Shown here piece by piece: positions 2,989 through 43,062 of a stretch of 64,000 bases of DNA. Location of the stretch: sequence record ON529855.1; one strand, given 5' to 3'. The position numbers and the translations under genes are program-made. Under the pieces are notes generated by a model. The model ran no database searches. It saw only the letters and a list, made by a program, of their open reading frames with translations, and was not told where the DNA came from. Within the stretch, counting starts at the first letter, position 1. Every line of letters starts with the position of its first letter.

Positions 2989-4097
2989 CCCTACGAGGCC
3001 TGAAGAAGAAACCCGACGTGATGGTCTTCATCGGTCGTTTCCAGCCGCTCCATAACGGGCACCTGGACGTGATCGCCCAAGCCCTCTCGGCCGCCGAACG
3101 GCTGATCATCCTGGTGGGCTCGGCCAACCTGGCCCGCGACACCCGCAATCCCTTCACCTACGAAGAGCGCGCTGCCCTGATCCGCACCGCGATCGAGCAG
3201 AAGTTCGGCGCCGAGACCGCCGACCGCGTGGTGGTCTGTCCTGTGCCGGACAGCCCCTACGAACTTCAGGAATGGATCGAGACCGTCCAGATGACGGTCA
3301 AGATGAACACCGTGCCGTTCGTGCGTCCGACGATCAACCTGACCGGACACGATCGCGACGAGACCTCCTTCTATCTGAAGCTGTTCCCGCAGTGGCCCTA
3401 CGCCGGAGCCGAAGGCGCCACCGACCTCAACGCCTCGGCCCTGCGCGCCGACTACTTCAACGGCGGCGTCGACCTCTTCAAGAACGCCTGGCGCGACAGC
3501 GGTCCGGTCTGGCCGGCGGTGGCGCCGCCGGCGACCCTCGCCTTCCTTCAGGCCTTCCGCGATCGCCCCGAATATGCGCGACTGATGCGCGAACTCAAGG
3601 CCGAGCGCGCCTACAAGGCCAAGTACGGTCCAGGCCCTCACGTCACCCTCGACGCGGTGGTGATCCAATCGGGCCACGTCCTGGTCGGACGCCGCAAGGG
3701 TGAATACGGTCACGGCATGCTGGCCCTGCCGGGCGGCTTCTTGGAGGTCAAGCGCAACGAAACCCTGCTGGAGGGGGCCGAACGCGAGTGCTTCGAGGAG
3801 ACCGGGCTGTTCAATCACTTCGGCCCTGACAATCTGATCACCGACGAACGCCGGCGCATGCTGCACACCCACCTGCGAGGGACCGACGTCTTCGGGGACC
3901 CGAACCGTTCGCGGCGCGGACGCCTGATCACCCACGCCCACCTGTTCAAGCTGCCGGACGACTACACCCTGCCGCCGGTCGAGCCTTGGGACGATCTGGA
4001 GGACGTGCACTGGATGCCGATCTCGGACGTCCGCGCCGACGAGTTCTTCGAGGACCACGCCTTCATCATCGAGAAGATGATCCGGCAGTTCCTGTAA
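2985..4097 (+). CDS. nadM: bifunctional NMN adenylyltransferase / Nudix ADP-ribose pyrophosphatase (NadM-Nudix)
   Basis: GRFQPLHNGH nucleotidyltransferase motif, SAN..NPF, Nudix box GGFLEV..ETLLEGAERECFEETG. Confidence 0.93.
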   Translation: MTLRGLKKKPDVMVFIGRFQPLHNGHLDVIAQALSAAERLIILVGSANLARDTRNPFTYEERAALIRTAIEQKFGAETADRVVVCPVPDSPYELQEWIETVQMTVKMNTVPFVRPTINLTGHDRDETSFYLKLFPQWPYAGAEGATDLNASALRADYFNGGVDLFKNAWRDSGPVWPAVAPPATLAFLQAFRDRPEYARLMRELKAERAYKAKYGPGPHVTLDAVVIQSGHVLVGRRKGEYGHGMLALPGGFLEVKRNETLLEGAERECFEETGLFNHFGPDNLITDERRRMLHTHLRGTDVFGDPNRSRRGRLITHAHLFKLPDDYTLPPVEPWDDLEDVHWMPISDVRADEFFEDHAFIIEKMIRQFL

Positions 4098-12041: not shown

Positions 12042-12518
12042 ATGAGCACTCTGAAAGACCTCCAAGACCTCGCCCTCCAGCAGCGCAAGGCCGCCGCCCA
12101 GGGCGACGGCGGCGAGCACGCCGTCTTCCTCGCCATGATTCTGTCCGACGCCGCCGGCCTCGCCAAGAGCCAGCAGCGGTCGATGACGGACGAAGACGCC
12201 GAGACCGCCATCCGATCGACCGTCAAGGCGTTCGACAAGACCCTGGCCGGCGACGAGGCCAAGGGGCTCAAGGCGGTCGATCCCGACAGCGACTACGGGC
12301 GCAAGATGATCGCCCAGCGCGACGTCATCGCCGCCCTGGTGCCGGCGCCTCTGGACGGCCACCTGCTCGCGATGGCGATCCGCGACGCCGCCCAGGCGAC
12401 CGAGAGCGAGATCAGCGCCAAGGGCATGGGCAAGATCATGGGCTGGCTGAACGCGCAATACCCTGGCCGGGTTGACGGCGCCAAGGTCAAGGCCGTCCTG
12501 GTCTCGGGCGCCGCCTGA
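12042..12518 (+). CDS. GatB/YqeY-domain-like protein
   Basis: Helical protein with VIAALVPAPLD and KGMGKIMGWL...GRVDGAKV signature of YqeY. Confidence 0.75.
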   Translation: MSTLKDLQDLALQQRKAAAQGDGGEHAVFLAMILSDAAGLAKSQQRSMTDEDAETAIRSTVKAFDKTLAGDEAKGLKAVDPDSDYGRKMIAQRDVIAALVPAPLDGHLLAMAIRDAAQATESEISAKGMGKIMGWLNAQYPGRVDGAKVKAVLVSGAA

Positions 12519-27225: not shown

Positions 27226-27539
27226 TGAACTGGATCATGAACGGGCAGGACCCTGACGCACCGCGCGGGCCGTGTCGCCGTCGATACCTGCCGATCGCCT
27301 TGGCGGCGGCCGCCGCCCTGTCGGGCTGCAAGGGCGTGGCCGAGGAAATCCACGCCGTCGGATTGCAGGCCCGCGACGATCTGATCGCGGGGAACACCTA
27401 CCACTACGACCCCCGCGTGAACCTCTGTTTCGCGGTCGGGGCCTACGCCCGTACCGGCAACTTCACCGACAATCTGACCCAGACCTATGTGCCATGCACC
27501 GACGAGGTCATGGCCCAAGCCCTGAAAGACGCTCCGTGA
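27225..27539 (+). CDS. putative lipoprotein
   Basis: Signal-like segment ending LSGC (lipobox). Confidence 0.65.
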   Translation: MNWIMNGQDPDAPRGPCRRRYLPIALAAAAALSGCKGVAEEIHAVGLQARDDLIAGNTYHYDPRVNLCFAVGAYARTGNFTDNLTQTYVPCTDEVMAQALKDAP

Positions 27540-28393
27540 GTTACATCGCCCCCGTCCTGCCGCACGACGTCTACGGCGAGGCCAATGTGCGCCTCGGCCG
27601 CGTAGAGGCTGAAGAGAACGTCACCATCCTGTTCGCGGTGGAGTCCGGGTCGCGCGCCTGGGGCTTCCCTTCGCCCGACAGCGACAACGACGTGCGCTTC
27701 TTCTACGTGCGCCCGATCAGTCACTACCTGGGCCTGGAGTCTCCGCGCGACGTGATCGAACGTCCGATCGAGGACCCGTGGGACCTGAACGGCTGGGACC
27801 TGCGCAAGGCGCTGCAACTGCTGGTCAAGGGCAACGCCACCGCCATGGAATGGCTGTCGAGCCCGCTGATCTACCGTGAGCACGGCCCGCTGCCGGCGCG
27901 CCTGCGCGACCTGATCAAGCGGCACGCCTCGCCGGAATCCAGCGCGCGGCACTACTTCGGCCTGACCCGGCAATGCTACGCCGGCGAAATCAGCAACCGG
28001 CCGACCGCCGCCCAGAACGCCCAGAACGAGGCTGACGGGGTCATCGTCAAGGGCCTGACCCAGGTCAACCTGAAGAAGTACCTCTATGCGGTGCGCGGCG
28101 CCATGTCGATCGCCTGGATCGCCCGCTACAAGGAGGTGCCGCCGATGACCATGCCGGCGCTGATGAGCCATGCCGTGGCCTCCGAAGCCGTCGCGGCCGA
28201 GATCACCACCCTGCTGCGGCGCAAGTCGACCATGGGCGAGTTCGGTCACGGCGACCGCATCGCGGTGCTGGATGAGTTCATCGAAGCCCAAATGGAATGG
28301 GTCAAGGCCCAGGGCTTCGACCGGCTGCCGATGAGCGAGGCCTTCGCCGCCGAGGCCGAACAGCTTCTGCTCGACGCCCTGGGGATCGGCTGA
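27536..28393 (+). CDS. DNA polymerase beta-superfamily nucleotidyltransferase (YcgL-like)
   Basis: ESGSRAWGFPSPDSDNDVRF, DLNGWDLRKAL.LL.KGN, KKYLYAVR motifs; GTG start. Confidence 0.88.
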   Translation: MSYIAPVLPHDVYGEANVRLGRVEAEENVTILFAVESGSRAWGFPSPDSDNDVRFFYVRPISHYLGLESPRDVIERPIEDPWDLNGWDLRKALQLLVKGNATAMEWLSSPLIYREHGPLPARLRDLIKRHASPESSARHYFGLTRQCYAGEISNRPTAAQNAQNEADGVIVKGLTQVNLKKYLYAVRGAMSIAWIARYKEVPPMTMPALMSHAVASEAVAAEITTLLRRKSTMGEFGHGDRIAVLDEFIEAQMEWVKAQGFDRLPMSEAFAAEAEQLLLDALGIG

Positions 28394-31733: not shown

Positions 31734-32972
31734 GTGAGCACCTTTGCTGTTCCGATCCTCGCGATCGACGACGTCTACGATCACCCCAACGCTGATCGCC
31801 TCTCCATCATCCGCATTCGCGGCTACGAAGCCGTCGCCGGCAAGGCCGAGGACGGATCGCACCGCTTCGTCAAGGGGGAGCGCATCATCTACGTGCCCGA
31901 GGGCGCGGTGGTGCCGGCCGCGCACCTGAAGGAGCGCGGCTACTGGAACGAGGCCAAGGACATCGGCCTGCTGGCGGGAACCAAGGGCAACCGCGTCAAG
32001 GCGATCACCCTGCGTGGCGTGCTGAGCCAGGGCCTTGTGTGGAAGACCGAACCCCTCGTCGGTGCAAAGGTCAAGGATCGCGCGACCGGAGACATCGTCG
32101 CCCAGGTGAATCCGGAGAAGCCTGCGCTGGCGGTCGCCACGGCCGAAGACGGCTCGAAAACGGCGGTGATGGTTGATTTCGGCGACGACGTCGCCGACTT
32201 CTTCGGCATCACCAAATACGACCCGCCGATCCCTCCGGGCCTGGACGGCGACGTCTTTGGCCTGTTCGAGGCGATGTTCAACTACGACATCGAGAACGCC
32301 AAGGCCTTCCCGAACCTGTTCACCGAGGACGACGTCGTCACGGTGACGGAGAAGCTGCACGGCACCTTCTGCCGGATGACCTACATGCCCGGCATCGAGC
32401 CGCGCGAGGACCTGTTCGGCGACGGCCGCGTGGCGATCACCTCCAAGGGCCTGGGCGCCGACGGCCTGGTGTTCAAGAACACCGCCTTCAACCGCCAGAA
32501 GAACGTCTACGTGCGCAACATGCTGCCGCTGGTGGACCACTTCGTCTCGGCCTGCAACCAGGACGCCAAGGGCCTGACGGTCCACCTGATGGGCGAGGTC
32601 TACGGCGCCGGCGTGCAGGACCTCAAGTACGGCCGCACCGAAGACCAGGGCTTCGCCGCCTTCGACGTCTGGATCGAGAAGTCGGGCTTCCTGGCCGAGG
32701 TCGAGAAGGATTACGCCTGCATCGCCTTCGGGGTGGAGCGGGTGCCGGTGCTGTTCGAGGGCTTCTACGACAAGGCGCTGATCGAAGACTTCGCCAAGGG
32801 CGACACCACGATCGACGGCGCCGCGAACATCCGCGAGGGCGTCGTCGTGACCCTGACCGGCGAGCAGGACAAACGCCCTGACGGCAACGGCCTGGGCGGC
32901 ACCCTGCGCCCGATCTGCAAGGTCGTGTCGGAAGCCTACCTGACCCGCAAGGGCGGGACCGAACTGCAATAG
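31734..32972 (+). CDS. RNA ligase, DRB0094 (Rnl2-related) family
   Basis: HPNADRL, LRGVLSQGL, TEKLHGT motif I, GEVYG.GVQ, FDV, REGVV, terminal K.VS..YL. Confidence 0.92.
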   Translation: MSTFAVPILAIDDVYDHPNADRLSIIRIRGYEAVAGKAEDGSHRFVKGERIIYVPEGAVVPAAHLKERGYWNEAKDIGLLAGTKGNRVKAITLRGVLSQGLVWKTEPLVGAKVKDRATGDIVAQVNPEKPALAVATAEDGSKTAVMVDFGDDVADFFGITKYDPPIPPGLDGDVFGLFEAMFNYDIENAKAFPNLFTEDDVVTVTEKLHGTFCRMTYMPGIEPREDLFGDGRVAITSKGLGADGLVFKNTAFNRQKNVYVRNMLPLVDHFVSACNQDAKGLTVHLMGEVYGAGVQDLKYGRTEDQGFAAFDVWIEKSGFLAEVEKDYACIAFGVERVPVLFEGFYDKALIEDFAKGDTTIDGAANIREGVVVTLTGEQDKRPDGNGLGGTLRPICKVVSEAYLTRKGGTELQ

Positions 32973-36814: not shown

Positions 36815-37144
36815 ATGCATACCCGACAACCCGAAGAGTTCGCCCGAATCCTCGACGAGGCGGCCGAGCATATCGCACGCCAACCCATCCATCCCGGCCA
36901 ATCCCTGCCGGGGTTATGGAACCTGGACGACGATTCGCACGAGCCGGCGCGCCTGATCGGCGTCATCGTGGCCTCGGCCCTGGCCCAGGTCTGCAAGACC
37001 GGCGATTGCGACCTGCAAGAGGCGCTCGCCAGCTATGCGGCGGTCTCTCACAACATCCCCCTGGTCGCCAAGGGCGGTCCGGACGTGATCGCGGCGCAGA
37101 ACCTGCGCGACGCCGCCCGGACCCTGCGCGAAGCGCGCCATTGA
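36815..37144 (+). CDS. hypothetical protein
   Basis: AGGA RBS; 109 aa. Confidence 0.7.
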   Translation: MHTRQPEEFARILDEAAEHIARQPIHPGQSLPGLWNLDDDSHEPARLIGVIVASALAQVCKTGDCDLQEALASYAAVSHNIPLVAKGGPDVIAAQNLRDAARTLREARH

Positions 37145-37147
37145 CGC

Positions 37148-37183
37148 AAAAAGGCCCGTCGCTGTCGAGCGCCGGGCCTTTAA
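37148..37183. terminator. probable bidirectional terminator
   Basis: AAAAAGGCCCG...CGGGCCTTTAA between convergent protein and RNA genes. Confidence 0.65.
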
Positions 37184-37186
37184 TGT

Positions 37187-37273
37187 TGGAGGTGCGACCT
37201 GGACTCGAACCAGGATGAGGGTTTCCCCTACGGCTTATGAGGCCGCTGCCTATTCCAGCCGCGCCACCGCACC
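37187..37273 (-). tRNA. tRNA with CAT anticodon, long variable arm and U73 (Met/Ile2 identity uncertain)
   Basis: GGTGCGG acceptor stem; GCGGC-CTCATAA-GCCGT; V-arm AGGG-GAAA-CCCT; CCTGG-TTCGAGT-CCAGG; encoded TCCA end. Confidence 0.85.
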
Positions 37274-37284
37274 AAAAAGAAGTC

Positions 37285-37363
37285 CAGGCGTGCTCCCGTT
37301 ACACTAAACCGGCGAGGGTCATGACCCTCGGGCGCCGGCTGCGGGATCGAACCGCTCTACCTG
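37285..37363 (-). ncRNA. circularly permuted tRNA-like element
   Basis: Order T-arm (GCGG-TTCGATC-CCGC), acceptor-like stem GCCGGCG/CGCCGGT capped by a hairpin, D-arm (GTGT-AACGGGA-GCAC); closed by CAGG/CCTG. Confidence 0.7.
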
Positions 37364-37367
37364 TGTA

Positions 37368-37436
37368 TCCGCTGTCCGCGCCACGCCAGCGTCCGCCGCT
37401 AAGCGGGCGCCTGGAGAGTCGAACTCCGACAACGAA
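37368..37436 (-). ncRNA. second permuted tRNA-like element
   Basis: 9-bp closing stem TTCGTTGTC/GACAGCGGA, T-arm GGAG-TTCGACT-CTCC, capped acceptor-like stem; D-arm degenerate. Confidence 0.55.
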
Positions 37437-37504
37437 GATTCGGACCAGCCCGTCGGCCGGTCCACGAACGCCGCGACGCCGAGGGAGGCGTCGGGGCGGT
37501 CGAA

Positions 37505-37582
37505 TGGGAGCGGGGACACGATTCGAACGTGCGATCTCTTGGTTATGAGCCAAGAATGTTGACCGGGCTACACTACCCCGCG
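37505..37582 (-). tRNA. tRNA-Met (CAT), initiator-like
   Basis: 5' CGCGGGG with 1:72 mismatch, CTTGG-CTCATAA-CCAAG, T-loop TTCGAAT, encoded CCA. Confidence 0.9.
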
Positions 37583-37593
37583 ACTCTTAGGCG

Positions 37594-37894
37594 CCAGTTC
37601 CGACGGCAGTGCGCCGGCTGGTACTCAACGGGCTCCTCCGCCGACCCTGCGCCAGGAACCATGGCGGGCACAGGATCAAGACGGAGGCGTTGCTTTACAC
37701 CCACCTTGGACGTCGGACCCGTCGGGCCGACGAAACTTTGACCAGGGGTTGTGGGACGAGTAATCCCGCCCTCTGGCCCGGCGGACTACTAGGCCTGCCC
37801 TTGCCTGGGCTCCCCCAGGCGTCCGGCACGACTTTTGGTCAACCAACCTTTACTCACGAAGACGGACGTAGCACCCGGCGTGGATCGGAACTGG
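37594..37894 (-). ncRNA. unidentified structured RNA (about 300 nt)
   Basis: 10-bp terminal stem CCAGTTCCGA/TCGGAACTGG, nested CGCCGG/CCGGCG and TTGACCA/TGGTCAA stems, internal hairpins; no credible ORF. Confidence 0.55.
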
Positions 37895-37974
37895 TAGGCC
37901 CCTCTCCTGAACGGGCCGCCGTGCTCTGGCGGGGGTCCGTCGTCATCGCCGCCGGCGTCCGCCTGCGAGAGTAA

Positions 37975-38312
37975 AGTGGGGAACTTTCTGTTCCAAGGCC
38001 CGGCAAGCCGGGGTTCCCCATACCCGTGGTCGCCCTTAGGCGGCCAGGAGGACTCGTTCGCCAGCGGCGAAGTTGTCGTTGGAAGCTTCGACAGTTGTCA
38101 AAGTTGGATCGTGAGCGGCCGAAACCGCCATGCAGACCCTAGCACTCGCCATTCAATCCCGTCACCAACGTCAATCGATACTGTTCGGCCCCTCAAACCG
38201 CGCCCGTCTCCCATCATAGGAGGGGGATTGGTGGAGCCGACGGGATTCGCACCCGTGTCTTGCCCGTCTGTTTCGTTCTCTCTGCTTCGGACCGAAGTCC
38301 TCCGCGCGACGA
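37975..38312 (-). ncRNA. ssrA: tmRNA, circularly permuted two-piece form
   Basis: Acceptor piece ends CGGCTCC-A-CCA at 38229; 36-nt spacer; coding piece starts GGGGCCG at 38192 (G3:U70); tag frame ...SNDNFAAGERVLLAA-stop (38036-38083); outer ends approximate. Confidence 0.9.
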
Positions 38313-38318
38313 AATGCC

Positions 38319-38347
38319 TGTATACAGAGTCCGTTTTGGAGTGTCAA
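38319..38347 (-). promoter_or_regulatory. sigma70 promoter of tmRNA
   Basis: TTGACA-N17-TATACA immediately upstream of the acceptor piece. Confidence 0.75.
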
Positions 38348-38366
38348 GGATTACGTCAAAGATTTT

Positions 38367-38453
38367 TGGAGGGACGGGTGAGAATCGAACTCACGCCAGG
38401 CTTTCGCCAGGAGGATTTGCAGTCCCCCGCCTTACCACTCGGTCCACCGTCCC
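38367..38453 (-). tRNA. tRNA-Cys (GCA) with long variable arm
   Basis: GGGACGG/CCGTCCC acceptor, GGGGA-CTGCAAA-TCCTC, V-arm GGC-GAAA-GCC, T-loop TTCGATT, U73 and CCA. Confidence 0.9.
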
Positions 38454-38463
38454 CTGGCATCGA

Positions 38464-38598
38464 TCTGGAAAGGGGTACCCGCCCGTGCCCGCCGCAGGTC
38501 CCGTGGTCGGTCCCGGCGGCGTCAGGGTTTCACGGCCCCAGGTCGACCCGCTCCCGTGATAGAGGGCGATACGCTGCGGGCGGGCTCGCCTTTCCAGA
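38464..38598 (-). ncRNA. unidentified stem-loop RNA (about 135 nt)
   Basis: Terminal stems TCTGGAAAGG/CCTTTCCAGA and CCCGCCCG/CGGGCGGG; lies between promoter and tRNA-Cys. Confidence 0.5.
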
Positions 38599-38658
38599 CG
38601 AAAAGGACCGCCCTGTTGCACTCCCCGGAGGGATCGTGTGACGGCCCGTGACCCTCGT

Positions 38659-38687
38659 CTTATAGCGGAAGCGGTCGGGGCAGGCAA
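38659..38687 (-). promoter_or_regulatory. sigma70 promoter for RNA cluster
   Basis: TTGCCT-N17-TATAAG (GCTATAAG, Caulobacter-style -10). Confidence 0.65.
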
Positions 38688-38832
38688 GTTCGAAAACGCG
38701 CGGGTGTCAAAAATCTCGGCACTTCGTCAGGATTCTGCCGCTAAAATGTCGATTGAACTTTATGTTAAGTCGTGCTAAGGTCCTCATGCAGTCGTCAGCA
38801 ACAGACTGCGTCCTGCCAACGGAGACATACAG

Positions 38833-39570
38833 ATGCTGCACAGTGTTCATGGTACGGTTCCTAAGCTTAAACGATGGTGCGGCCCCTCCGCCATCTCCAT
38901 CATTACAGGCCAGCCCTATCACCACGCTTTGGCGTTGCTTAAGGACGTCAAGGCCGCCAGACGAACCTACCGCGTAACGAAGGCGCCGATTGTCAAGGGC
39001 GCGTCATCGCCTAGCGTGCGCGCCGTTCTGAAGAGCCTGGGTTATCTGACGACGCAGCGGGTGACGCCGGCAGGGATCACCGTCGCGGCCTGGCTGGCGG
39101 CGCGTCCTCCCGCCGACCAGTTCACCACCTTCCTGATCGTGGCGGCCAACCACTGGATGGTGGTGCGCGGCGACGAGGCCTGCTGCGGCATTCTCGGGAC
39201 GCCGACGCCGGTCGAGCGCATGAAGTTCCGACGCGGCGTCGTCACCGAATGCTGGGTCGTCACGCCGTCCTCGCAGGGCGTGGCCCCGATCGTGACCGAG
39301 GCGCGCAAGCCGTCCGCTCGGGCAGCGTCCTCCTGGGACCGCAGCGAGGCGCGCGACCGCCGCGCCTTCGTCAAGCTGGCGCGCCAGCACGCGTTCACCT
39401 ACGACATCGTCCGGGATTGCGACACGATCCGCTACATGGAGATCGCGCCCTGCGCCGTCTTCCCCAAGGGGCTGGACACCCTGCACCATGACTGGGCGGA
39501 AACCCTGGATCGGGTCCGGCATTGCCTCGATCACCCCGAGGACGCCGCCTCGGGCAGCTACGGCCGCTGA
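38833..39570 (+). CDS. hypothetical protein, papain/C39-like Cys-His pattern
   Basis: GGAGA RBS; WCGPSAISIITG and NHWMVV; own promoter-like site and terminator. Confidence 0.75.
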   Translation: MLHSVHGTVPKLKRWCGPSAISIITGQPYHHALALLKDVKAARRTYRVTKAPIVKGASSPSVRAVLKSLGYLTTQRVTPAGITVAAWLAARPPADQFTTFLIVAANHWMVVRGDEACCGILGTPTPVERMKFRRGVVTECWVVTPSSQGVAPIVTEARKPSARAASSWDRSEARDRRAFVKLARQHAFTYDIVRDCDTIRYMEIAPCAVFPKGLDTLHHDWAETLDRVRHCLDHPEDAASGSYGR

Positions 39571-39574
39571 ACGC

Positions 39575-39610
39575 AAGAGCCCCGACCGATCACTCGGTCG
39601 GGGCTTTTTC
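39575..39610 (+). terminator. intrinsic terminator
   Basis: AAGAGCCCCGACCGA-TCAC-TCGGTCGGGGCTTTTT. Confidence 0.85.
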
Positions 39611-40560
39611 TCGCGCCATCGTCTGTGTCTCGGCCGGCGCAGCGTCAGAAGGGTGTGTCGCGAGACCTCCGTCGCGGTCCCAGGGCACTGGGGCTCCCTG
39701 GAACAAACCTCACCTGAACGTGGCTTTCCTCCCCAAGGGGCTGAAGGTGGCGGGGTCCAGGCGACCCTGTGGGGCTCACACGGCAAGGCCTCTTCTCAAT
39801 GCCAGGCATAGAAGTAGGCAGAGAGCATAGGTTCTTCCTACCCTCGTCATTGTCGTGGTCCGTTTTCCGTCTATCACAGCCTCTGGCTGCCGTCACGCCT
39901 GGTTCCCATTTCTAGGACGGCGTTCCCCTCAGAAGACGGGTCCTGGTAGACCGCGTGTGGCTCTTCAGCGCCTGACGGAACTCGACGACGTGGTTGCCGG
40001 CCGTCTGAACTAGCGTCCCCAAGCGCCCCCATGGACATGCCGTAGGGGTGTGGCAGGGTCCGCCCCACGCTGTGTCAGGATATACGACAATGAAGAGGGG
40101 GAGGTCAATACCGCCTCTGGCGGCCGTCACGCCTAATCGTTCGTCTCGGGCGGCGTTCCCGTCAGGCCTGATTGTCCCCGGCCGAGGTTTGTTCGGGGGA
40201 GCGGTGCGGTCAATCACCCCGACTCACGTTCTCTCGTAACCCGACAGCACGGGCTTAAGCGCGCACGAGCGCTGTGATACAGTCACGCGGTGGTCGACCT
40301 ATGGTGAGGTCATCGAGCCCAGTCGCGCAATCCCACCCTGTATGACGGGATTCATGGCTATCGTCAAGGGGTAACGGGCGCTCTCTCCCGGTCACGCCTC
40401 GTCCTGATGTCTCAGCCGGCGTTCGCTTCAGACAGTACGGCAATCTCGGGGCCGTCCCACGCTCCCGCTGTCGTCGGGCCTGTTCCCAGAGGAAGGTCTA
40501 CTCCAGGGCAGTCTGCTCCAGAGGCCAGGTCAGGGCGAACCCTGTGTGCTGCGCCTAAGG
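39600..40560 (-). ncRNA. array of four homologous unidentified structured RNA units
   Basis: Conserved core CTGA-N3-(GAA)CGCCG-NN-YRAG-A-N8-11-GGCGYGA at 39611-39648, 39893-39932, 40127-40165 and 40392-40431; long closing stems; no credible ORF. Confidence 0.65.
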
Positions 40561-40607
40561 ACCTTCAGCAAGATTGAAGCCTACCAGAACAAACCGAAAC
40601 GGGCAAA

Positions 40608-40640
40608 GAAAAACGGCCCCGATCCGAAGATCGGGGCCGC
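40608..40640 (-). terminator. terminator downstream of Ro60
   Basis: GCGGCCCCGATC-TTCG-GATCGGGGCCG-TTTTTCTTT on minus strand. Confidence 0.8.
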
Positions 40641-40697
40641 ATCGTTCTTTACGCGACAGCGTAATTCCGCGAACGGATTACGAATACCCGTATTGGA

Positions 40698-42083
40698 TCA
40701 GCCGCCGACGAGGCCGTCGTCGAACTCCATCGCCTCGACCTCACGGATATAGCGCAGGACGCTCTCCGAGAAGCCGTCGATGTGGACCCATCCGTTGCCG
40801 TAGCCGATGCCATGCGCATAGCTGGCGACGTTGATCATATAGGCCTTGCCGGCCTTGGGCGCCGGCAGTCGCCCGCCGCCCATGCCGCTGCTCAGCGTTC
40901 CCGACGCCTGTTCGTCGGTGATGACGATCAGGCGGTCGCAGGCGAACTGACGGTTCACCACGTCCACGGCCTGGGCCAGGGCGGTGCCCTGGTGCGGCTG
41001 CGAACGGATCACCGCCTCGACGCCCGCCATGCCCTTGCGGGCCGGGACCTCGACCAGACCGTTGGAGAAGGTCACGACGCGCACGTCGCCCGGCAGGATC
41101 GCCGCCAGCGTCGCCGCCGCATCCATCCGGGTCAGGTCCGACTTTCCGGACAGTTTTTGCCGCATGGAGTAGGAGACGTCGACCATGACCACGGTCGAAC
41201 CCTTCAAGGGTTCGGCCTGATCAATCGTCGCCACGAGGGCGTCGTCCAGCGCCCGCTCGAACGAGGGCGCATAACGCGCCGCCGCCGTGAAGCGGAAGGG
41301 CAGGACGCGGTCCGCGCCCTTGCGCGCGCGGATCGCAGCATTGACCAGATCGCGGTCGACGCCGGCCTGATCCATGTTGCGCAGGTTGCGCAGCAGGGCG
41401 AGGTAGCCCAGCTTGCCGTCGGCCAGCAGACGCGTGAACGTCGCCTTCTTGTCGGCGCCGCCCGACAGGGCGACTTCCCAGGTGTCGGGCGCCGTCAGTT
41501 CATTGTCGACCAGCTTCTTGTAGAGGGCCTCGCGGTCGTCGTTCGCCGGCTTGGCGTGCGCCAGGAACAGAACGTCGCGCAGGCGCACGGACTTGGCCCG
41601 GTCGTACTTGGCGATCTGATAGGCGTCGAAGTTGCCGAAGGCCAGCGACAGCCCCTTCTTCACCTGAGCGGACAGCGGCGCCTTCTTGCCGTCGGCGCGC
41701 ACCGGGTTGAGCGCCCAGTAGAGGGCCAGGAACTCGCTCAGTTCATCGGCGCGTTGGATGACGCGGGCGATGGTCAGCGACACCAGGGCCGAGCCGGACC
41801 CGCGTTGGGCCAGAACGACGAGCAGCAGAAGGGGGACGTGACGCAGCTTGGCGTCCTCACGCGCTTCAATCGCGATCTGGGCGAGGGTCTCGACCGGAAC
41901 TTCCTTGGCGAGGCTCTGGATACGGTCGGCGATCGACACGCCGCTCTCGTAGAAATTGTCTTCCCACAGCAGGCAGGACATGACCGACCGGCGCAGGGCC
42001 TGGGTCTTGGTCATCCGATCGGCCGGTGCGCCTTCATGGGTGCGCGCGGTGGTCGTCTTGGGCTTTGCGTTGATCGACGCCAT
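40698..42083 (-). CDS. rsr: Ro60 / TROVE-vWA RNA-binding protein
   Basis: TROVE motifs (CLLWEDNFYE, R...KLRHVP, YQIAKY, TWE..LS, ALLRNLRN, VLPFRF) and vWA MIDAS VDVSYSM...VITDEQ; GAGGAG RBS before ATG 42083. Confidence 0.95.
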   Translation of the reverse strand: MASINAKPKTTTARTHEGAPADRMTKTQALRRSVMSCLLWEDNFYESGVSIADRIQSLAKEVPVETLAQIAIEAREDAKLRHVPLLLLVVLAQRGSGSALVSLTIARVIQRADELSEFLALYWALNPVRADGKKAPLSAQVKKGLSLAFGNFDAYQIAKYDRAKSVRLRDVLFLAHAKPANDDREALYKKLVDNELTAPDTWEVALSGGADKKATFTRLLADGKLGYLALLRNLRNMDQAGVDRDLVNAAIRARKGADRVLPFRFTAAARYAPSFERALDDALVATIDQAEPLKGSTVVMVDVSYSMRQKLSGKSDLTRMDAAATLAAILPGDVRVVTFSNGLVEVPARKGMAGVEAVIRSQPHQGTALAQAVDVVNRQFACDRLIVITDEQASGTLSSGMGGGRLPAPKAGKAYMINVASYAHGIGYGNGWVHIDGFSESVLRYIREVEAMEFDDGLVGG

Positions 42084-42111
42084 AATGGGTCCCCTCCTCG
42101 TCTGGTCAAGC

Positions 42112-42279
42112 GACCAAGAGGTCGGGGAGGAACAAGCACGAGCCCGGTTCATCCGGTGCGTCTACCACTTCCGCCACCTGCACCAGAGATGCAGGCCAGG
42201 ACTTGAACCTGGATACCCTTGACGGGCGCCGGCTCCAGCGAAGTATAGGCTCGTTACGCCATCCCCGACCTCGCGGTCA
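42112..42279 (-). ncRNA. Y RNA (YrlA-like) 1, tRNA-Leu-derived permuted module
   Basis: Long terminal stem; V-arm, T-arm CCAGG-TTCAAGT-CCTGG, capped acceptor CCTGCA/TGCAGG, Leu-like D-arm GCGGAAGTGGTAGACGC. Confidence 0.85.
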
Positions 42280-42285
42280 GTGAAC

Positions 42286-42428
42286 TCCGGCGCTCTGGTA
42301 GGAAGGCGGGGGAACATGCGCGACCGGATGCGGGATCGAACCGCGAGACCGGGGGTTTGAATCCCGGCTTATCAACCAGCGATGTAACCGACCGCTCTCA
42401 CCACCCGCCCACCAACCAGGGCGCCGGA
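42286..42428 (-). ncRNA. Y RNA-like 2, non-permuted tRNA-like module with TCA loop
   Basis: Terminal stem TCCGGCGC/GCGCCGGA; same TGGTG / TGTTCC motif; D-arm, GGG-ATTCAAA-CCC, T-arm in normal order. Confidence 0.7.
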
Positions 42429-42436
42429 AAAGCAGA

Positions 42437-42591
42437 AACATGAAGGCGGCGGGGGAATAAGCGACCCCACTCTTTTTTAGGCGTGCTACCGTTACACCAA
42501 ACGCCGCTAGGCGACGTTGCGGAATCGAACCGCTCATCCCGCTCCACATGCGATGAAAGTGACGTCTATCGCCACCCACCGCCTTCATGTT
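42437..42591 (-). ncRNA. Y RNA (YrlA-like) 3
   Basis: 13-bp terminal stem AACATGAAGGCGG/CCGCCTTCATGTT; T-arm GCGG-TTCGATT-CCGC, capped acceptor CGTCGC/GCGGCG, D-arm GTGT-AACGGTA-GCAC. Confidence 0.85.
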
Positions 42592-42599
42592 GTTGGCTC

Positions 42600-42774
42600 A
42601 GAAGCGTGTGGTGGATCGACAGGGGAACCGGCGGAAAGGCGCCGTTTGGACTATCGTTCTACCAACTGAACTACCGCCGCGCCCGAAGGTGCGCCGAGTG
42701 GGATTCGAACCCACGACCTACAGTTTGCGAAGAAGGCCTCTCCCTCACCACCTGTCGATCCGCCACACGCTTCT
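42600..42774 (-). ncRNA. Y RNA (YrlA-like) 4
   Basis: 24-bp terminal stem; ACTGT-AGGTC, T-arm GTGGG-TTCGAAT-CCCAC, capped acceptor, D-arm GTTC-AGTTGGTA-GAAC, ATAGT: a tRNA opened at the anticodon loop. Confidence 0.88.
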
Positions 42775-42780
42775 CAACCC

Positions 42781-42930
42781 TGTCCTAGACAGACCCGAGG
42801 ACCCAACCCCGGACGAGGAACCGAAGTTCCCCGGCGGGATCAGGATCGTCCGGGAATAGGCGGAACCGAGAGCGGGGCCAAGGCCCCCACGTACCAAAAA
42901 CGAAGAACTCGGTCCCTGTCGCCACGGACA
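42781..42930 (-). ncRNA. structured leader RNA upstream of the Y RNA array
   Basis: TGTCC/GGACA and GACAG/CTGTC outer stems; 9-bp GGGACCGAG/CTCGGTTCC and CCCGGACGA/TCGTCCGGG; UUCG hairpin. Confidence 0.5.
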
Positions 42931-42934
42931 ATGA

Positions 42935-42964
42935 CTGTGTGCCCGATCCCGGTTCAGGTGTCAA
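42935..42964 (-). promoter_or_regulatory. putative promoter of Y RNA-Ro60 operon
   Basis: TTGACA at 42959-42964 followed at 16-17 nt by a weak GCACACA -10. Confidence 0.45.
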
Positions 42965-42996: not shown

Positions 42997-43030
42997 AAAA
43001 AGAAAACCCCCGGCCGAAGCCAGGGGTTTC
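42997..43030 (-). terminator. terminator after repressor-like gene
   Basis: GGAAACCCCTGGC-TTCG-GCCGGGGTTTCTTTTT. Confidence 0.75.
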
Positions 43031-43062
43031 CACGACATCTGACGTCGGCGGGGGTTCCAGGG

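What the first reader, a model, noticed from the sequence alone, without database searches (positions are those of the whole stretch)
37187..42964. A 5.8-kb RNA island that may form one translation-rescue and RNA-repair system
Seen: three tRNAs, tmRNA, two free tRNA mimics, at least two orphan structured RNAs, a four-unit ncRNA array, Ro60 and four Y RNAs are contiguous, co-oriented and driven by at least three sigma70-like promoters. An RNA ligase (31734), a Pol-beta nucleotidyltransferase (27536) and a YqeY-like tRNA-binding domain (12042) lie elsewhere in the window. Established: Ro60/Y RNA loci co-occur with RNA-repair genes, and many host defences cleave tRNA. Inference: together these form a counter-defence module that decoys, repairs and bypasses host tRNA or ribosome damage.
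Basis: inference. Interest (0 to 1): 0.75.

Follow-up and report, generated by a model that had tools for sequence, protein, structure and literature searches.

The report
Phage stable-RNA cluster: two separable modules
A giant Brevundimonas phage carries a real, dense cluster of small-RNA genes (five Y RNAs with their Ro60 protein, an unannotated tmRNA, three tRNAs, tRNA look-alikes and a new repeated small-RNA family). Related phages show that this is two independent modules lying side by side, not one proven anti-defence machine.

Summary
The window is Brevundimonas phage vB_BpoS-Domovoi, a 352.7-kb jumbo phage.

**Confirmed:**
- Three tRNAs.
- A two-piece (permuted) tmRNA. It is absent from the GenBank record.
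- A Ro60 gene (TROVE and vWA domains).
- Four Y RNAs with covariation-supported stems, plus a fifth, Y0.
- One complete and one partial free tRNA-like module.
- A repeated small-RNA array (three strong units and one weak unit) that shares a 61-nt 3' motif absent from Rfam.
- The RNA ligase, RlaP nucleotidyltransferase and YqeY genes elsewhere in the window.

**Corrections:**
- A plus-strand protein gene (38833-39570) interrupts the island.
- There are at least four or five transcription units.
- Part of the 'orphan' RNA is probably the 3' domain of the tmRNA.

- In CcrColossus the Ro60/Y operon lies about 24 kb from the tRNA/tmRNA block.
- 26 Caulobacter phage records hold the tmRNA and two-tRNA-Met stretch, and the four phiCbK-type loci examined also carry the long-arm tRNA-Cys. 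Only Colossus and PW have Ro60.
- A 43-kb Xanthomonas phage carries a Y-array and Ro60 with no tmRNA or true tRNA nearby.

**Best reading:** a mobile Ro60/Y RNP operon sits next to a conserved translation-supply and ribosome-rescue RNA cassette. A counter-defence role remains untested.

The parts
42936..42964 (-). Putative sigma70-type promoter of the Y-RNA/Ro60 operon (-35 TTGACA, 17-nt spacer, weak -10 CACACA)
   Evidence: Relaxed pattern scan. It lies just after the terminator of the upstream HTH gene at 43002-43031. A TTGACA hexamer sits at the same place in CcrColossus. The pattern was chosen post hoc, so this is inference.
42845..42932 (-). Y0: short Y-type RNA without a tRNA-like domain (YrlB-like). 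It has the motif UGGCGACAG and an invariant closing stem.
   Evidence: 93% identical to Kikimora where the flanks are 55-67%. Present in Colossus and PW, with 3 compensatory pairs in the inner helix.
42600..42774 (-). Y1: Y RNA with a 25-bp bulged closing stem and a T-arm / stem / D-arm tRNA-like domain
   Evidence: Fold. 14 compensatory pairs. Best Rfam YrlA hit in the window: 27.1 bits, E 0.016, below the gathering score of 69.
42438..42590 (-). Y2: Y RNA with a tRNA-like domain
   Evidence: Fold. 7 compensatory pairs. Detected by the stem/motif scan.
42285..42429 (-). Y3: Y RNA with a long closing stem and two T-arm-like hairpins but no clear D-arm
   Evidence: Fold. 3 compensatory pairs, with a closing stem that is almost invariant. 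Weak tRNA-Sec-like hit of 21.8 bits.
42118..42272 (-). Y4: Y RNA with a tRNA-Leu-like D-arm. It ends about 35 nt before the Ro60 start codon.
   Evidence: Fold. 17 compensatory pairs. YrlA 13.6 bits.
40698..42083 (-). Ro60 (TROVE HEAT-repeat ring plus vWA domain), 461 aa
   Evidence: Pfam TROVE 9.6e-12, VWA_2 and vWA_Ro60. PHROG 850. PDB 9KOP/9L5Y, a TROVE-domain protein, at 1.3e-20 over residues 11-452. Codon-periodic substitutions of 24/7/81 against Bambus.
40613..40640 (-). Intrinsic terminator that ends the Y-RNA/Ro60 operon
   Evidence: 12-bp GC-rich stem followed by a T-run.
40373..40612 (-). Array unit A, with the R1 3' motif at 40373-40433
   Evidence: R1 covariance model, 64.8 bits. 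Unit alignment.
40108..40367 (-). Array unit B: promoter (-35 at 40362-40367, -10 at 40339-40344), body, and R1 motif at 40108-40167
   Evidence: (74.5 bits).
39874..40108 (-). Array unit C: promoter (-35 at 40103-40108, -10 at 40079-40084), body, and R1 motif at 39874-39934
   Evidence: (75.1 bits).
39586..39873 (-). Array unit D, with a degenerate R1 motif (39607-39650) and a bidirectional terminator (39586-39601)
   Evidence: R1 16.3 bits, E about 1e-3. Terminator. Array substitutions are not codon-periodic (39/36/31) and the indels are out of frame.
38833..39570 (+). Opposite-strand protein gene (DOMOVOI_04130, 245 aa, function unknown) that interrupts the island
   Evidence: Annotation. 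Codon-periodic substitutions and in-frame indels. No Pfam or PHROG hit. Homologues in all 7 Brevundimonas giants, Erythrobacter phage XM05 and Roseobacter phage CRP-901, and a weak one at the same place in L018. The AlphaFold2 model is unusable, with pLDDT 38.
38454..38687 (-). Putative promoter (TTGCCT, 17-nt spacer, TATAAG; 38659-38687) and a roughly 200-nt conserved leader RNA ahead of tRNA-Cys
   Evidence: The promoter was read by eye. The conserved core is 80% identical to Kikimora at 38504-38563. The consensus fold has 5 compensatory pairs but a positive covariation term. No Rfam match. The R1 model does not detect it.
38367..38453 (-). tRNA-Cys (GCA), 87 nt, with an unusual long variable arm, U73 and an encoded CCA
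   Evidence: ARAGORN and Rfam tRNA, 46.8 bits. The same 87-89-nt form occurs in Colossus, Karma, BL10, Rogue and L018.
38319..38347 (-). Promoter of the tmRNA unit (TTGACA, 17-nt spacer, TATACA)
   Evidence: Both hexamers are conserved in Kikimora and Gurke (columns 14-41).
37740..38312 (-). Two-piece (permuted) tmRNA precursor. The acceptor piece ends in CCA at 38229-38231. The coding piece starts at about 38192. The tag ORF is 38036-38086. A conserved 3' domain runs to about 37740; its extent is uncertain.
   Evidence: RF04321, 60.2 bits against a gathering score of 47. Alpha_tmRNA 47.8 bits. A G3:U70 pair is read from the alignment. Tag. 75-100% identity to Kikimora across 38149-37734. Consensus fold. 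ARAGORN misses it.
37505..37582 (-). tRNA-Met (CAU), 78 nt, with a C1xU72 mismatch at the top of the acceptor stem
   Evidence: (53.2 bits).
37368..37436 (-). M1: partial tRNA-like element (T-arm plus a stem, inside a 9-bp closing helix)
   Evidence: Consensus fold with compensatory pairs. A counterpart in Colossus was seen by eye.
37285..37363 (-). M2: complete free tRNA-like module (5-bp closing stem, T-arm, acceptor-like stem, D-arm) with no Ro60-type long stem
   Evidence: One search shows compensatory pairs in the closing stem and the acceptor-like stem. 21-24-nt stretches are 92-95% identical to parts of Y2 and Y3 (families D2 and D9). The Karma counterpart scores 29.7 bits on YrlA. The Domovoi copy is not scored by Rfam.
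37187..37273 (-). tRNA with a CAU anticodon, 87 nt, long variable arm, U73 and an encoded CCA (Met or Ile2; identity unclear)
   Evidence: (38.5 bits).
37154..37170 (-). Terminator that closes the tmRNA/tRNA unit, convergent with the plus-strand gene block ending at 37144
31734..32972 (+). Rnl-type RNA ligase (outside the island, opposite strand)
   Evidence: PF09414 at 1.3e-16 plus an OB-fold domain. The order ligase / small gene / helicase / tRNA block is also found in Colossus.
27536..28393 (+). RlaP-family Pol-beta nucleotidyltransferase (outside the island)
   Evidence: PF10127 at 2e-72. PHROG 14344.
12042..12518 (+). YqeY-like domain protein (outside the island)
   Evidence: PF09424 at 3.3e-9.

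Best explanation
The region is a genuine cluster of stable-RNA genes on the minus strand of a jumbo phage. It is made of two modules with separate evolutionary histories, which happen to be neighbours in the Brevundimonas giant phages.

**Module A (42964-40613)** is a self-contained operon: promoter, five different Y RNAs (Y0-Y4), Ro60, terminator.
- Shown: the genes, the RNA structures, and the occurrence of the same layout in other phages.
- Inferred: the Y RNAs are cut out of the transcript. They bind the phage Ro60 ring through their bulged closing stems, which carry a shared UGGYG motif on the 5' side and a UUCC motif on the 3' side. As in bacterial Ro60/Y/PNPase particles and the Thermus phage phiLo Ro60-Yrl-PNPase complex, the RNP would couple to host exoribonucleases or tRNA-binding enzymes and so reshape the handling of structured RNA during infection.

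**Module B (40612-37154)** is a translation-supply and ribosome-rescue cassette found throughout the Dolichocephalovirinae.
- It holds small-RNA units that each end in a conserved 61-nt 'R1' structure, then tRNA-Cys, a two-piece tmRNA, tRNA-Met, two tRNA-like elements and a second CAU tRNA.
- Shown: the genes, their order, and their conservation.
- Inferred: the tmRNA is charged with alanine (it has a G3:U70 pair) and, together with host SmpB, frees stalled ribosomes and tags the unfinished peptides with ...VLLAA. The tRNAs top up decoding. RNase P cleavage at the tRNA 5' ends releases the upstream RNAs.

No evidence ties the two modules into one machine, and no evidence ties either module to defence evasion.
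For: **Identity of the window.** 100% match to ON529855.1.

**Module A**
- Ro60 domains and PDB relatives.
- Covariation in Y0-Y4.
- A stem/motif scan finds Y1-Y4 on the island strand and only one other hit in the 64-kb window on both strands.
- The same promoter / Y-array / Ro60 / terminator layout occurs in Colossus and PW, with eight Y RNAs read by eye (6-7 found by the scan), and in Xanthomonas phage Sopo, with about five.
- Published Ro60 / Y-like RNA / PNPase complex from a Thermus phage (PMC12135203).
- YrlA-type RNAs reported next to Ro60 in 22 phages (PMC4201824).

**Module B**
- tmRNA above the Rfam gathering score, and its tag.
- tRNAs.
- M1/M2 covariation.
- The R1 model gives three strong hits and one weak hit here and none elsewhere in the window.
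- The same gene order occurs in Kikimora/Gurke, Colossus and contig L018; Karma, BL10 and Rogue carry the same genes but with tRNA-Cys on the opposite strand.

**Separability**
- The modules are 24 kb apart in Colossus.
- 26 Caulobacter phage records carry the tmRNA block, but only Colossus and PW have Ro60.

**Separate transcription units.** Terminators, promoter-like sites and an opposite-strand coding gene.
Against: - No expression, RNA-end or binding data exist for any of these RNAs.
- Every Y RNA scores below the Rfam YrlA gathering score, and their 5' motif is only a variant of the published GNCGAA(N)G.
- The promoter calls rest on a pattern defined after seeing the sites. The strict scan is at chance level.
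- All seven Brevundimonas giants keep the two modules adjacent and on the same strand. This could reflect shared regulation or function in that lineage.
- Colossus, PW and the Brevundimonas giants all possess both modules, so a functional interaction in trans is not excluded.
- The ligase / helicase / tRNA-block order is conserved between Domovoi and Colossus. This is compatible with a repair link, or simply with a collinear genome backbone.
Confidence: 0.7

Rival explanations
1. The whole island, together with the RNA ligase, RlaP and YqeY genes, is one counter-defence system. tRNA mimics and Y RNAs act as decoys for host tRNA nucleases. The ligase and nucleotidyltransferase repair cut tRNAs. 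The tmRNA rescues ribosomes stalled by the damage.
For: - All the named parts exist.
- RlaP is a family named for its association with RNA-repair ligases (Pfam description).
- Jumbo-phage RNA ligases and TROVE proteins have been discussed as RNA-repair and conflict systems (PMC7824862).
- The two modules are adjacent in seven Brevundimonas giants.
- The ligase / helicase / tRNA-block order is shared with Colossus.
Against: - The modules are not co-conserved or co-located in relatives.
- They lie in separate transcription units with an opposite-strand gene between them.
- M1, M2 and Y1-Y4 lack an anticodon stem-loop in the normal position, so they are poor decoys for anticodon nucleases.
- The ligase, RlaP and YqeY genes are on the other strand, 4-25 kb away, inside blocks of unrelated genes.
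- There is no RtcB, and no kinase/phosphatase partner was identified next to the island.
Confidence: 0.1
2. The 'array' is not a set of small-RNA genes. It is a stack of tandem promoters, each preceded by an R1 structure that works as an insulator, a processing site or a non-canonical terminator. Ancestrally this stack drove high-level transcription into the tRNA-Cys / tmRNA operon. The variable 'bodies' are spacers with no function of their own.
For: - In Colossus and in contig L018 the array is co-oriented with tRNA-Cys and directly upstream of it. The last R1 copy abuts the tRNA 5' end.
- R1 is followed within 1-14 nt by a TTGAC -35 hexamer in five of the cases inspected.
- The bodies are not alignable between lineages, whereas R1 is.
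- No antisense targets for the bodies were found in the window.
Against: - The distance between R1 and the promoter varies, and some copies have no promoter after them (Domovoi unit C to D, and Colossus copy 3).
- The bodies are 75-100% identical between Domovoi and Bambus, often higher than neighbouring coding DNA, and they fold stably.
- In Domovoi the array is cut off from tRNA-Cys by a terminator and an opposite-strand gene, yet it is retained.
Confidence: 0.2

Closest known systems
Bacterial and phage Ro60 (Rsr) with YrlA/YrlB-type Y RNAs (Chen, Sim, Wolin 2014, PMC4201824; Thermus phage phiLo Ro60-Yrl1/2, PMC12135203)
   Same: - A Ro60 with TROVE and vWA domains.
- Y RNAs on the same strand within 1 kb.
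- A long bulged closing stem.
- An internal T-arm / stem / D-arm tRNA-like domain in Y1, Y2 and Y4.
- One short Y RNA without that domain, like YrlB.
- CcrColossus, a relative, is already listed in the literature as a phage with Ro60 and Y-like RNAs.
   Different: - There are five distinct Y RNAs in one tandem operon (eight in Colossus), rather than one or two.
- The 5' motif is a variant (GGCGAUAG, GGCGACAG, GGUGAGG) of the published GNCGAA(N)G.
- Every copy is far below the Rfam gathering score of 69 (best 27 bits).
- No RtcB/RtcA repair genes are in the operon.
- None of these RNAs is annotated in the seven Brevundimonas phage records.
Two-piece (permuted) tmRNA of Alphaproteobacteria and their phages (Rfam RF04321 and RF01849; phage examples Lacusarx and Shash)
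   Same: - Permuted gene order, with the acceptor piece ending in CCA ahead of the coding piece.
- A G3:U70 pair.
- A tag with an ANDNFA-type start and an LAA-type end.
- The score is above the family's gathering score.
   Different: - ARAGORN does not detect it, and the genome paper reports no tmRNA.
- About 300 nt of highly conserved sequence follows the tag. In Karma, ARAGORN's tmRNA gene runs only about 90 nt past the tag.
- It is embedded between unusual tRNAs and tRNA-like elements.
Phage T4 tRNA gene cluster with its co-transcribed stable RNAs of unknown function (species 1 and 2, or band C and D RNAs). This comparison comes from my own knowledge and was not tested here.
   Same: Extra stable, structured small RNAs are interleaved with tRNA genes. 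They are presumably released by the same processing enzymes that mature the tRNAs.
   Different: The RNAs here share a defined 61-nt 3' module (R1), several have their own promoters, and the cluster also holds a tmRNA and permuted tRNA-like modules.
Salmonella rsr-yrlBA-rtcBA RNA-repair operon (PMC7790460, listed)
   Same: Ro60, Y RNAs and an RNA ligase are encoded in one genome.
   Different: - The ligase here is Rnl-type, not RtcB.
- It lies on the opposite strand, 7.7 kb from Ro60, and is not in the operon.
- In Colossus it lies about 28 kb from Ro60.

Membership tests
Y RNA, YrlA type (Rfam RF02553; Chen et al. 2014) | Scores at or above the Rfam gathering score (69 bits) | tested here: not met
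   Y1 scores 27.1 bits (E 0.016) and Y4 scores 13.6 bits. Y2, Y3, Y0 and M2 are not reported. Relatives reach 42 bits (Colossus), 39 bits (Kikimora) and 52 bits (Xanthomonas phage Sopo).
Y RNA, YrlA type | Encoded within 4 kb of Ro60 on the same strand | tested here: met
   Y0-Y4 lie 35-850 nt upstream of the Ro60 start on the minus strand. M1 and M2 are 3.3 kb downstream of the Ro60 stop, in another transcription unit.
Y RNA, YrlA type | Internal T-arm and D-arm stem-loops separated by an acceptor-like stem | tested here: met
   Met for Y1, Y2 and Y4 and for M2. Partly met for Y3, which has two T-like arms and no D-arm. Not met for Y0.
Y RNA, YrlA type | GNCGAA(N)G motif near the 5' end, in the Ro60-binding region | tested here: inconclusive
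   Variants only, read: GGUGAGG (Y1, Y3), GGCGAUAG (Y2), GGCGUAACG (Y4) and GGCGACAG (Y0). All are followed by a YUUCG or CAUCG block, and a UUCC motif lies on the 3' strand.
Y RNA (any type) | Physically bound by Ro60 | not testable with these tools
   This needs binding or co-purification data.
Ro60 / TROVE protein | TROVE HEAT-repeat ring followed by a vWA domain | tested here: met
   TROVE 45.2 bits (cut-off 23). VWA_2 27.7 bits (cut-off 27). vWA_Ro60 20.3 bits, which is below its cut-off. Full-length match to PDB 9KOP/9L5Y at 1.3e-20.
Two-piece tmRNA (RF04321) | Gathering score reached, with permuted order, an acceptor end with CCA, and a tag ORF with a stop | tested here: met
   60.2 bits against 47 over the full model, positions 1-213. 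CCA at 38229-38231 and a G3:U70 pair, read from the alignment. The tag is a 16-codon ORF ending LAA*.
Two-piece tmRNA | Partner protein SmpB available | not tested
   No SmpB search of the phage genome was made. Host SmpB is assumed.
Rtc-type Ro60-linked RNA-repair operon | RtcB (and RtcA) co-transcribed with Ro60 and the Y RNAs | tested here: not met
   The operon holds only the Y RNAs and Ro60, between a promoter and a terminator. The only ligase in the window is Rnl-type (PF09414) and lies on the other strand.
GOLLD RNA (RF02032) | Rfam gathering score of 150 bits | tested here: not met
   There is no GOLLD hit in the window at the gathering threshold or at E up to 10. Caulobacter virus Karma has one (171 bits) between its tRNA-Cys and tmRNA.
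Canonical class I tRNA-Cys and tRNA-Met | Short (4-5 nt) variable region | tested here: not met
   The tRNA(GCA) and one tRNA(CAU) are 87 nt long, with a stem-loop variable arm and a 3-bp D-stem. Which amino acids they accept cannot be told from sequence.

The most novel reading that the evidence does not exclude
The R1-terminated units are a new class of phage small RNA. Each has a variable body of about 150-220 nt and a conserved 61-nt 3' handle. The handle consists of a 5-bp helix flanked by invariant GA/GA dinucleotides, which could form a kink-turn-like motif, followed by a hairpin with an AGAG-type loop. The units mature in part through RNase P cleavage of the tRNA that directly follows them. 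Together with the Ro60-independent tRNA-like module M2, the tmRNA and two long-arm tRNAs, they would form a conserved 'stable-RNA cassette' of the Dolichocephalovirinae. In the Brevundimonas giants, this cassette's highly structured RNAs would be clients or partners of the adjacent Ro60/Y RNP.
Probability: 0.15. Interest if true: 0.7.

Novelty: new member of a known kind. Interest (0 to 1): 0.45.

Why it matters
**Annotation.** The Domovoi record (and, where checked, those of Kikimora, Gurke, Bambus, Kabachok and Marchewka) lacks annotation for a tmRNA, the Y RNAs and several other conserved structured RNAs. Some neighbouring records call Y-RNA domains 'tRNA-Ser' or 'tRNA-Gln'.

**Biology.**
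- In this Ro60 clade, a promoter / multi-Y-RNA array / Ro60 operon behaves as a mobile module. It occurs in phages from 43 kb to 357 kb.
- A tmRNA / tRNA / tRNA-mimic cassette with a repeated RNA motif absent from Rfam is conserved across a whole phage subfamily, with or without Ro60.
- This gives concrete RNA targets for asking what phage Ro60 particles and phage tmRNAs do.
- It also warns against reading physical clustering of RNA genes as evidence of one system.

Tried and rejected
Pfam and PHROGs gave nothing. Single-sequence AlphaFold2 gave pLDDT 38, so no fold search was run.
2. I suspected that the leader before tRNA-Cys is a fifth, diverged R1 unit. The R1 model does not detect it at E up to 5. 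The idea rests only on position: R1 abuts tRNA-Cys in Colossus and L018.
3. Hammerhead or another known ribozyme or riboswitch for R1: there are no Rfam hits in the array on the RNA strand, even at E up to 10. Rejected.
4. GOLLD or ROOL in the window: none.
5. Antisense targets of the array bodies, the leader and Y0 within the 64-kb window: only chance-level matches of 14 nt or less.
6. Small proteins encoded in the array: substitutions are not codon-periodic and the indels are out of frame. Rejected.
7. A cross-lineage alignment of M2 (Domovoi, Kikimora, Colossus, Karma, BL10) was too poor to build a model, and a hand-written T-arm/D-arm scanner returned nothing because its rules were too strict. 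M2 therefore rests plus the Karma YrlA hit.
8. A scan of 596 Gb of bacterial genomes for the R1 core gave 21 hits. They score only 17-30 bits on the full model and come from unrelated taxa, so I treat them as chance.
9. Two Y-RNA reviews could not be read because they are not held, and the supplement of Chen et al. 2014 is not held either. I could not check how many Y RNAs per phage were already reported.

Full report
**Source and setting**

The window matches Brevundimonas phage vB_BpoS-Domovoi (ON529855.1; 352,705 bp; Dolichocephalovirinae) at 100% identity. Window position equals record position minus 186,000. The island lies at the end of a minus-strand gene block (ribonucleotide reductase, dUTPase, an HTH protein). 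That block converges on a plus-strand block ending at 37144. In this stretch the GenBank record annotates only three tRNAs, one plus-strand hypothetical gene and one minus-strand hypothetical gene, which is Ro60. The genome paper states that ARAGORN found no tmRNA (PMC10070969).

**Checking the observation**

- *tRNAs.* ARAGORN and Rfam confirm tRNA(CAU) at 37187-37273, tRNA-Met(CAU) at 37505-37582 and tRNA-Cys(GCA) at 38367-38453, all on the minus strand.
- *tmRNA.* Rfam's permuted-tmRNA model matches 38036-38291 end to end at 60.2 bits, against a gathering score of 47. The alignment shows a T-arm, an acceptor 3' strand with CCA, a 5' GGGGCCG strand that gives a G3:U70 pair, and a tag reading frame. 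The frame translates to ASNDNFAAGERVLLAA*.
- *Ro60.* The gene at 40698-42083 has TROVE and vWA domains, matches PHROG 850 'RNA-binding protein' at 8e-61, and matches two PDB TROVE-domain entries, 9KOP and 9L5Y, at 1e-20 over its whole length. These are the codes deposited for the Thermus phage phiLo Ro60.

**The Y RNAs**

Between the HTH gene's terminator and the Ro60 start codon lie four RNAs of 145-175 nt. Each is closed by a long bulged helix.

Against the 35-45% diverged Kikimora/Gurke lineage, the predicted pairs carry 14 (Y1), 7 (Y2), 3 (Y3) and 17 (Y4) double-sided compensatory changes. Y1, Y2 and Y4 contain a T-arm, an acceptor-like stem and a D-arm in the permuted order that defines YrlA RNAs (PMC4201824). 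Y3 has two T-like arms.

A fifth element, Y0 (about 42845-42932), lies upstream of Y1.
- It has no tRNA-like part.
- It is 93% identical between lineages where its flanks are 55-67% identical.
- It recurs in CcrColossus and CcrPW, with three compensatory pairs in its inner helix and an invariant closing stem.

All five RNAs share a UGGYG block on the 5' side, a YUUCG or CAUCG block a little further in, and a UUCC block on the 3' side. This is a variant of the published GNCGAA(N)G Ro60-site motif. A crude scan for 'UGGYG ... UUCC flanked by 12 or more complementary bases' finds Y1-Y4 and only one other site in both strands of the window.

None reaches the Rfam YrlA gathering score of 69. Y1 scores 27 bits and Y4 scores 14 bits. 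Formal family membership by that model is therefore not met, although the architecture fits.

**The tRNA mimics**

Two conserved elements lie between tRNA-Met and the last tRNA.
- M2 (37285-37363) is a complete T-arm / stem / D-arm module closed by only 5 bp.
- M1 (37368-37436) has a T-arm and a stem inside a 9-bp helix.

Both show compensatory changes. Stretches of M2 are 92-95% identical to parts of Y2 and Y3. Rfam YrlA does not score M2 in Domovoi. It does score the equivalent element in Caulobacter virus Karma at 29.7 bits, and Karma has no Ro60.

**The array**

Region 40612-39586 contains units of 207-300 nt whose bodies are unrelated. Each ends in the same motif: CUGA-N-G-N-GA, a 5-bp helix (ACGCC/GGCGU), a 20-nt loop with a conserved GNCNGAGA, then GAC and a GC-rich hairpin with an AGA or AGAGAG loop.
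- On 11 copies from three lineages, 91% of cells pair, against 33-50% when the partner columns are slid. Four pairs show double-sided changes.
- A covariance model (R1) finds three copies at 65-75 bits and a fourth at 16 bits in the window, with nothing else above 12 bits in 64 kb.
- Substitutions in the array show no codon periodicity and the indels are out of frame. Ro60 and the plus-strand ORF show clear coding signatures.
- Rfam has no match.

**Corrections to 'contiguous, co-oriented, at least three promoters'**

- A plus-strand protein gene (38833-39570) sits between the array and tRNA-Cys. Its function remains unknown.
- Intrinsic terminators lie at 40613-40640, 39586-39601 and 37154-37170.
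- The tool's strict promoter scan is at chance level.
- A relaxed pattern (TTGACN, 16-18 nt, [TCA]A[TC]ANN) hits at 42964, 40367, 40108 and 38347, each just ahead of an RNA unit. It hits four times in the remaining 122 kb of both strands. That pattern was chosen after I had seen the sites.
- The tmRNA promoter hexamers are conserved in Kikimora.
- A fifth candidate promoter (TTGCCT, 17 nt, TATAAG) precedes the tRNA-Cys leader.

The island is therefore at least four or five transcription units.

**'Orphan' RNAs**

The stretch after the tmRNA tag (38035 to about 37740) is 75-97% identical to Kikimora, which is more than Ro60 itself. It folds into extended helices and has recognisable counterparts in Colossus. 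The economical reading is that it is the pseudoknot domain of the tmRNA coding piece. In Karma, however, ARAGORN's tmRNA extends only about 90 nt past the tag, so part of the Domovoi stretch may be a separate RNA.

The roughly 200-nt leader before tRNA-Cys has a conserved core but weak covariation support and no Rfam match.

**Comparative test of 'one system'**

- *CcrColossus.* The HTH / Y-array / Ro60 / terminator unit is followed by the lysis cassette. Reading by eye gives eight tandem Y RNAs there. The R1 array, long-arm tRNA-Cys, tmRNA (83.8 bits), tRNA-Met, M1/M2 and long-arm tRNA(CAU) lie about 24 kb away, next to the helicase and RNA ligase.
- *phiCbK-type phages.* In Karma, BL10 and Rogue the tmRNA block and R1 are present. 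In all, 26 Caulobacter phage records hold the tmRNA plus two-tRNA-Met stretch. A tblastn search of the same collection with Ro60 returns only Colossus and PW among Caulobacter phages.
- *The reverse case.* The 43.9-kb Xanthomonas phage Sopo has a Ro60 that is 59% identical. It is preceded by about five Y RNAs (YrlA 52 and 37 bits) and followed by a lysin, with no tmRNA and no convincing tRNA in the 7.9 kb examined.
- *An uncultivated relative.* The 20-kb viral contig L018 repeats the Domovoi layout of module B: an R1 array, an opposite-strand homologue of the 245-aa ORF, R1 abutting tRNA-Cys, tmRNA, tRNA-Met, and R1 abutting the long-arm tRNA.

Two modules are therefore each conserved as a unit and occur independently of each other. 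The array belongs with the tmRNA/tRNA module, not with Ro60.

**How it most likely works**

*Module A.* The operon structure, the RNA folds and the distribution are shown. It is inferred that the five Y RNAs are excised and bind Ro60 through the motif-bearing stem. By analogy with bacterial Ro60/Y/PNPase particles and the phiLo complex, the RNP would then engage host exoribonucleases or tRNA enzymes.

*Module B.* The genes and their order are shown. It is inferred that the tmRNA, alanine-charged and using host SmpB, rescues ribosomes on the damaged or truncated mRNAs that are abundant late in infection. The tRNAs would supplement decoding. RNase P cleavage would release the R1 units and M1/M2.

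What R1 and M1/M2 do is unknown. The invariant GA dinucleotides on both flanks of the R1 helix suggest tandem sheared pairs, a kink-turn-like protein-binding site. That is inference only.

**Comparison with known systems**

Phage Ro60 with Y RNAs is known: 22 phages in 2014, with CcrColossus named. Phage tmRNAs in alphaproteobacterial phages are also known. Domovoi is a new, unannotated member of both kinds. The R1 family and the Ro60-independent M2 module are not in Rfam and I found no paper on them, but my literature access was limited.

The Salmonella-type Ro60/Y/RtcB repair operon is not reproduced. The ligase is Rnl-type, lies on the opposite strand and is outside the operon.

**Verdict**

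The unifying interpretation is not supported by co-conservation or by operon structure, and it remains an untested possibility at about 0.1. Interest is moderate. It rests on the unannotated tmRNA, the multi-Y arrays as a mobile module, and a new conserved RNA motif tied to tmRNA/tRNA cassettes across a phage subfamily.

Noticed in passing
L012 3261-3747 (-), which is Caulobacter virus Karma at about 102.9-103.3 kb: A GOLLD RNA (RF02032; 171 bits against a gathering score of 150; E 1e-46) with an embedded tRNA-Lys (3610-3683). It sits between tRNA-Cys and the tmRNA of a phiCbK-type phage. No GOLLD hit occurs in Domovoi, Kikimora or Colossus at the equivalent place.
   Followed up: partly
window 38367-38453 and 37187-37273: The tRNA(GCA) and one tRNA(CAU) are 87 nt long. 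Each has a stem-loop variable arm with a GAAA-type loop, a 3-bp D-stem, U73 and an encoded CCA. These are class-II-like bodies carrying anticodons that normally sit on class-I tRNAs. The same forms are conserved in Colossus, Karma, BL10, Rogue and contig L018. Which amino acid they accept is unknown.
   Followed up: partly
window 37505-37582: This tRNA-Met has a C1xU72 mismatch at the top of the acceptor stem. That feature is reminiscent of bacterial initiator tRNA, but only two G-C pairs lie next to the anticodon loop. The Colossus counterpart appears to have a normal G1-C72 pair.
   Followed up: no
L002 7148-7222 and L007 7149-7223 (Kikimora and Gurke 'tRNA-Ser'); L003 8120-8187 (CcrColossus 'tRNA-Gln'): These annotated tRNAs lie inside Y RNAs upstream of Ro60. 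They are most likely the tRNA-like domains of Y RNAs that were mis-called as tRNA genes. ARAGORN as run here does not call the Colossus one.
   Followed up: partly
window 33336-36314 (+): The SNF2-type helicase next to the island carries a LAGLIDADG homing-endonuclease segment at residues about 344-397. Residues 125-471 have no counterpart in the Kikimora, Colossus or BL10 helicases. This suggests an intein-type insertion.
   Followed up: no
L018 1109-6988 (IMG/VR contig UViG_3300033068_001629, 20.4 kb): An uncultivated relative carries eight R1 motifs in 6 kb. Two of them end exactly at, or within 8 nt of, the first base of a tRNA (tRNA-Cys and the long-arm tRNA-Met).
   Followed up: partly
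window 39586-39601: A single hairpin appears to serve as a bidirectional terminator, for the minus-strand array and for the convergent plus-strand 245-aa gene.
   Followed up: no
L003 7360-8740 (CcrColossus) and L013 2380-3053 (Xanthomonas phage Sopo): The number of tandem Y RNAs ahead of Ro60 varies between phages of this Ro60 clade: about eight in Colossus, five in Domovoi and about five in Sopo. In both Colossus and Sopo the operon is followed by the lysis genes.
   Followed up: partly
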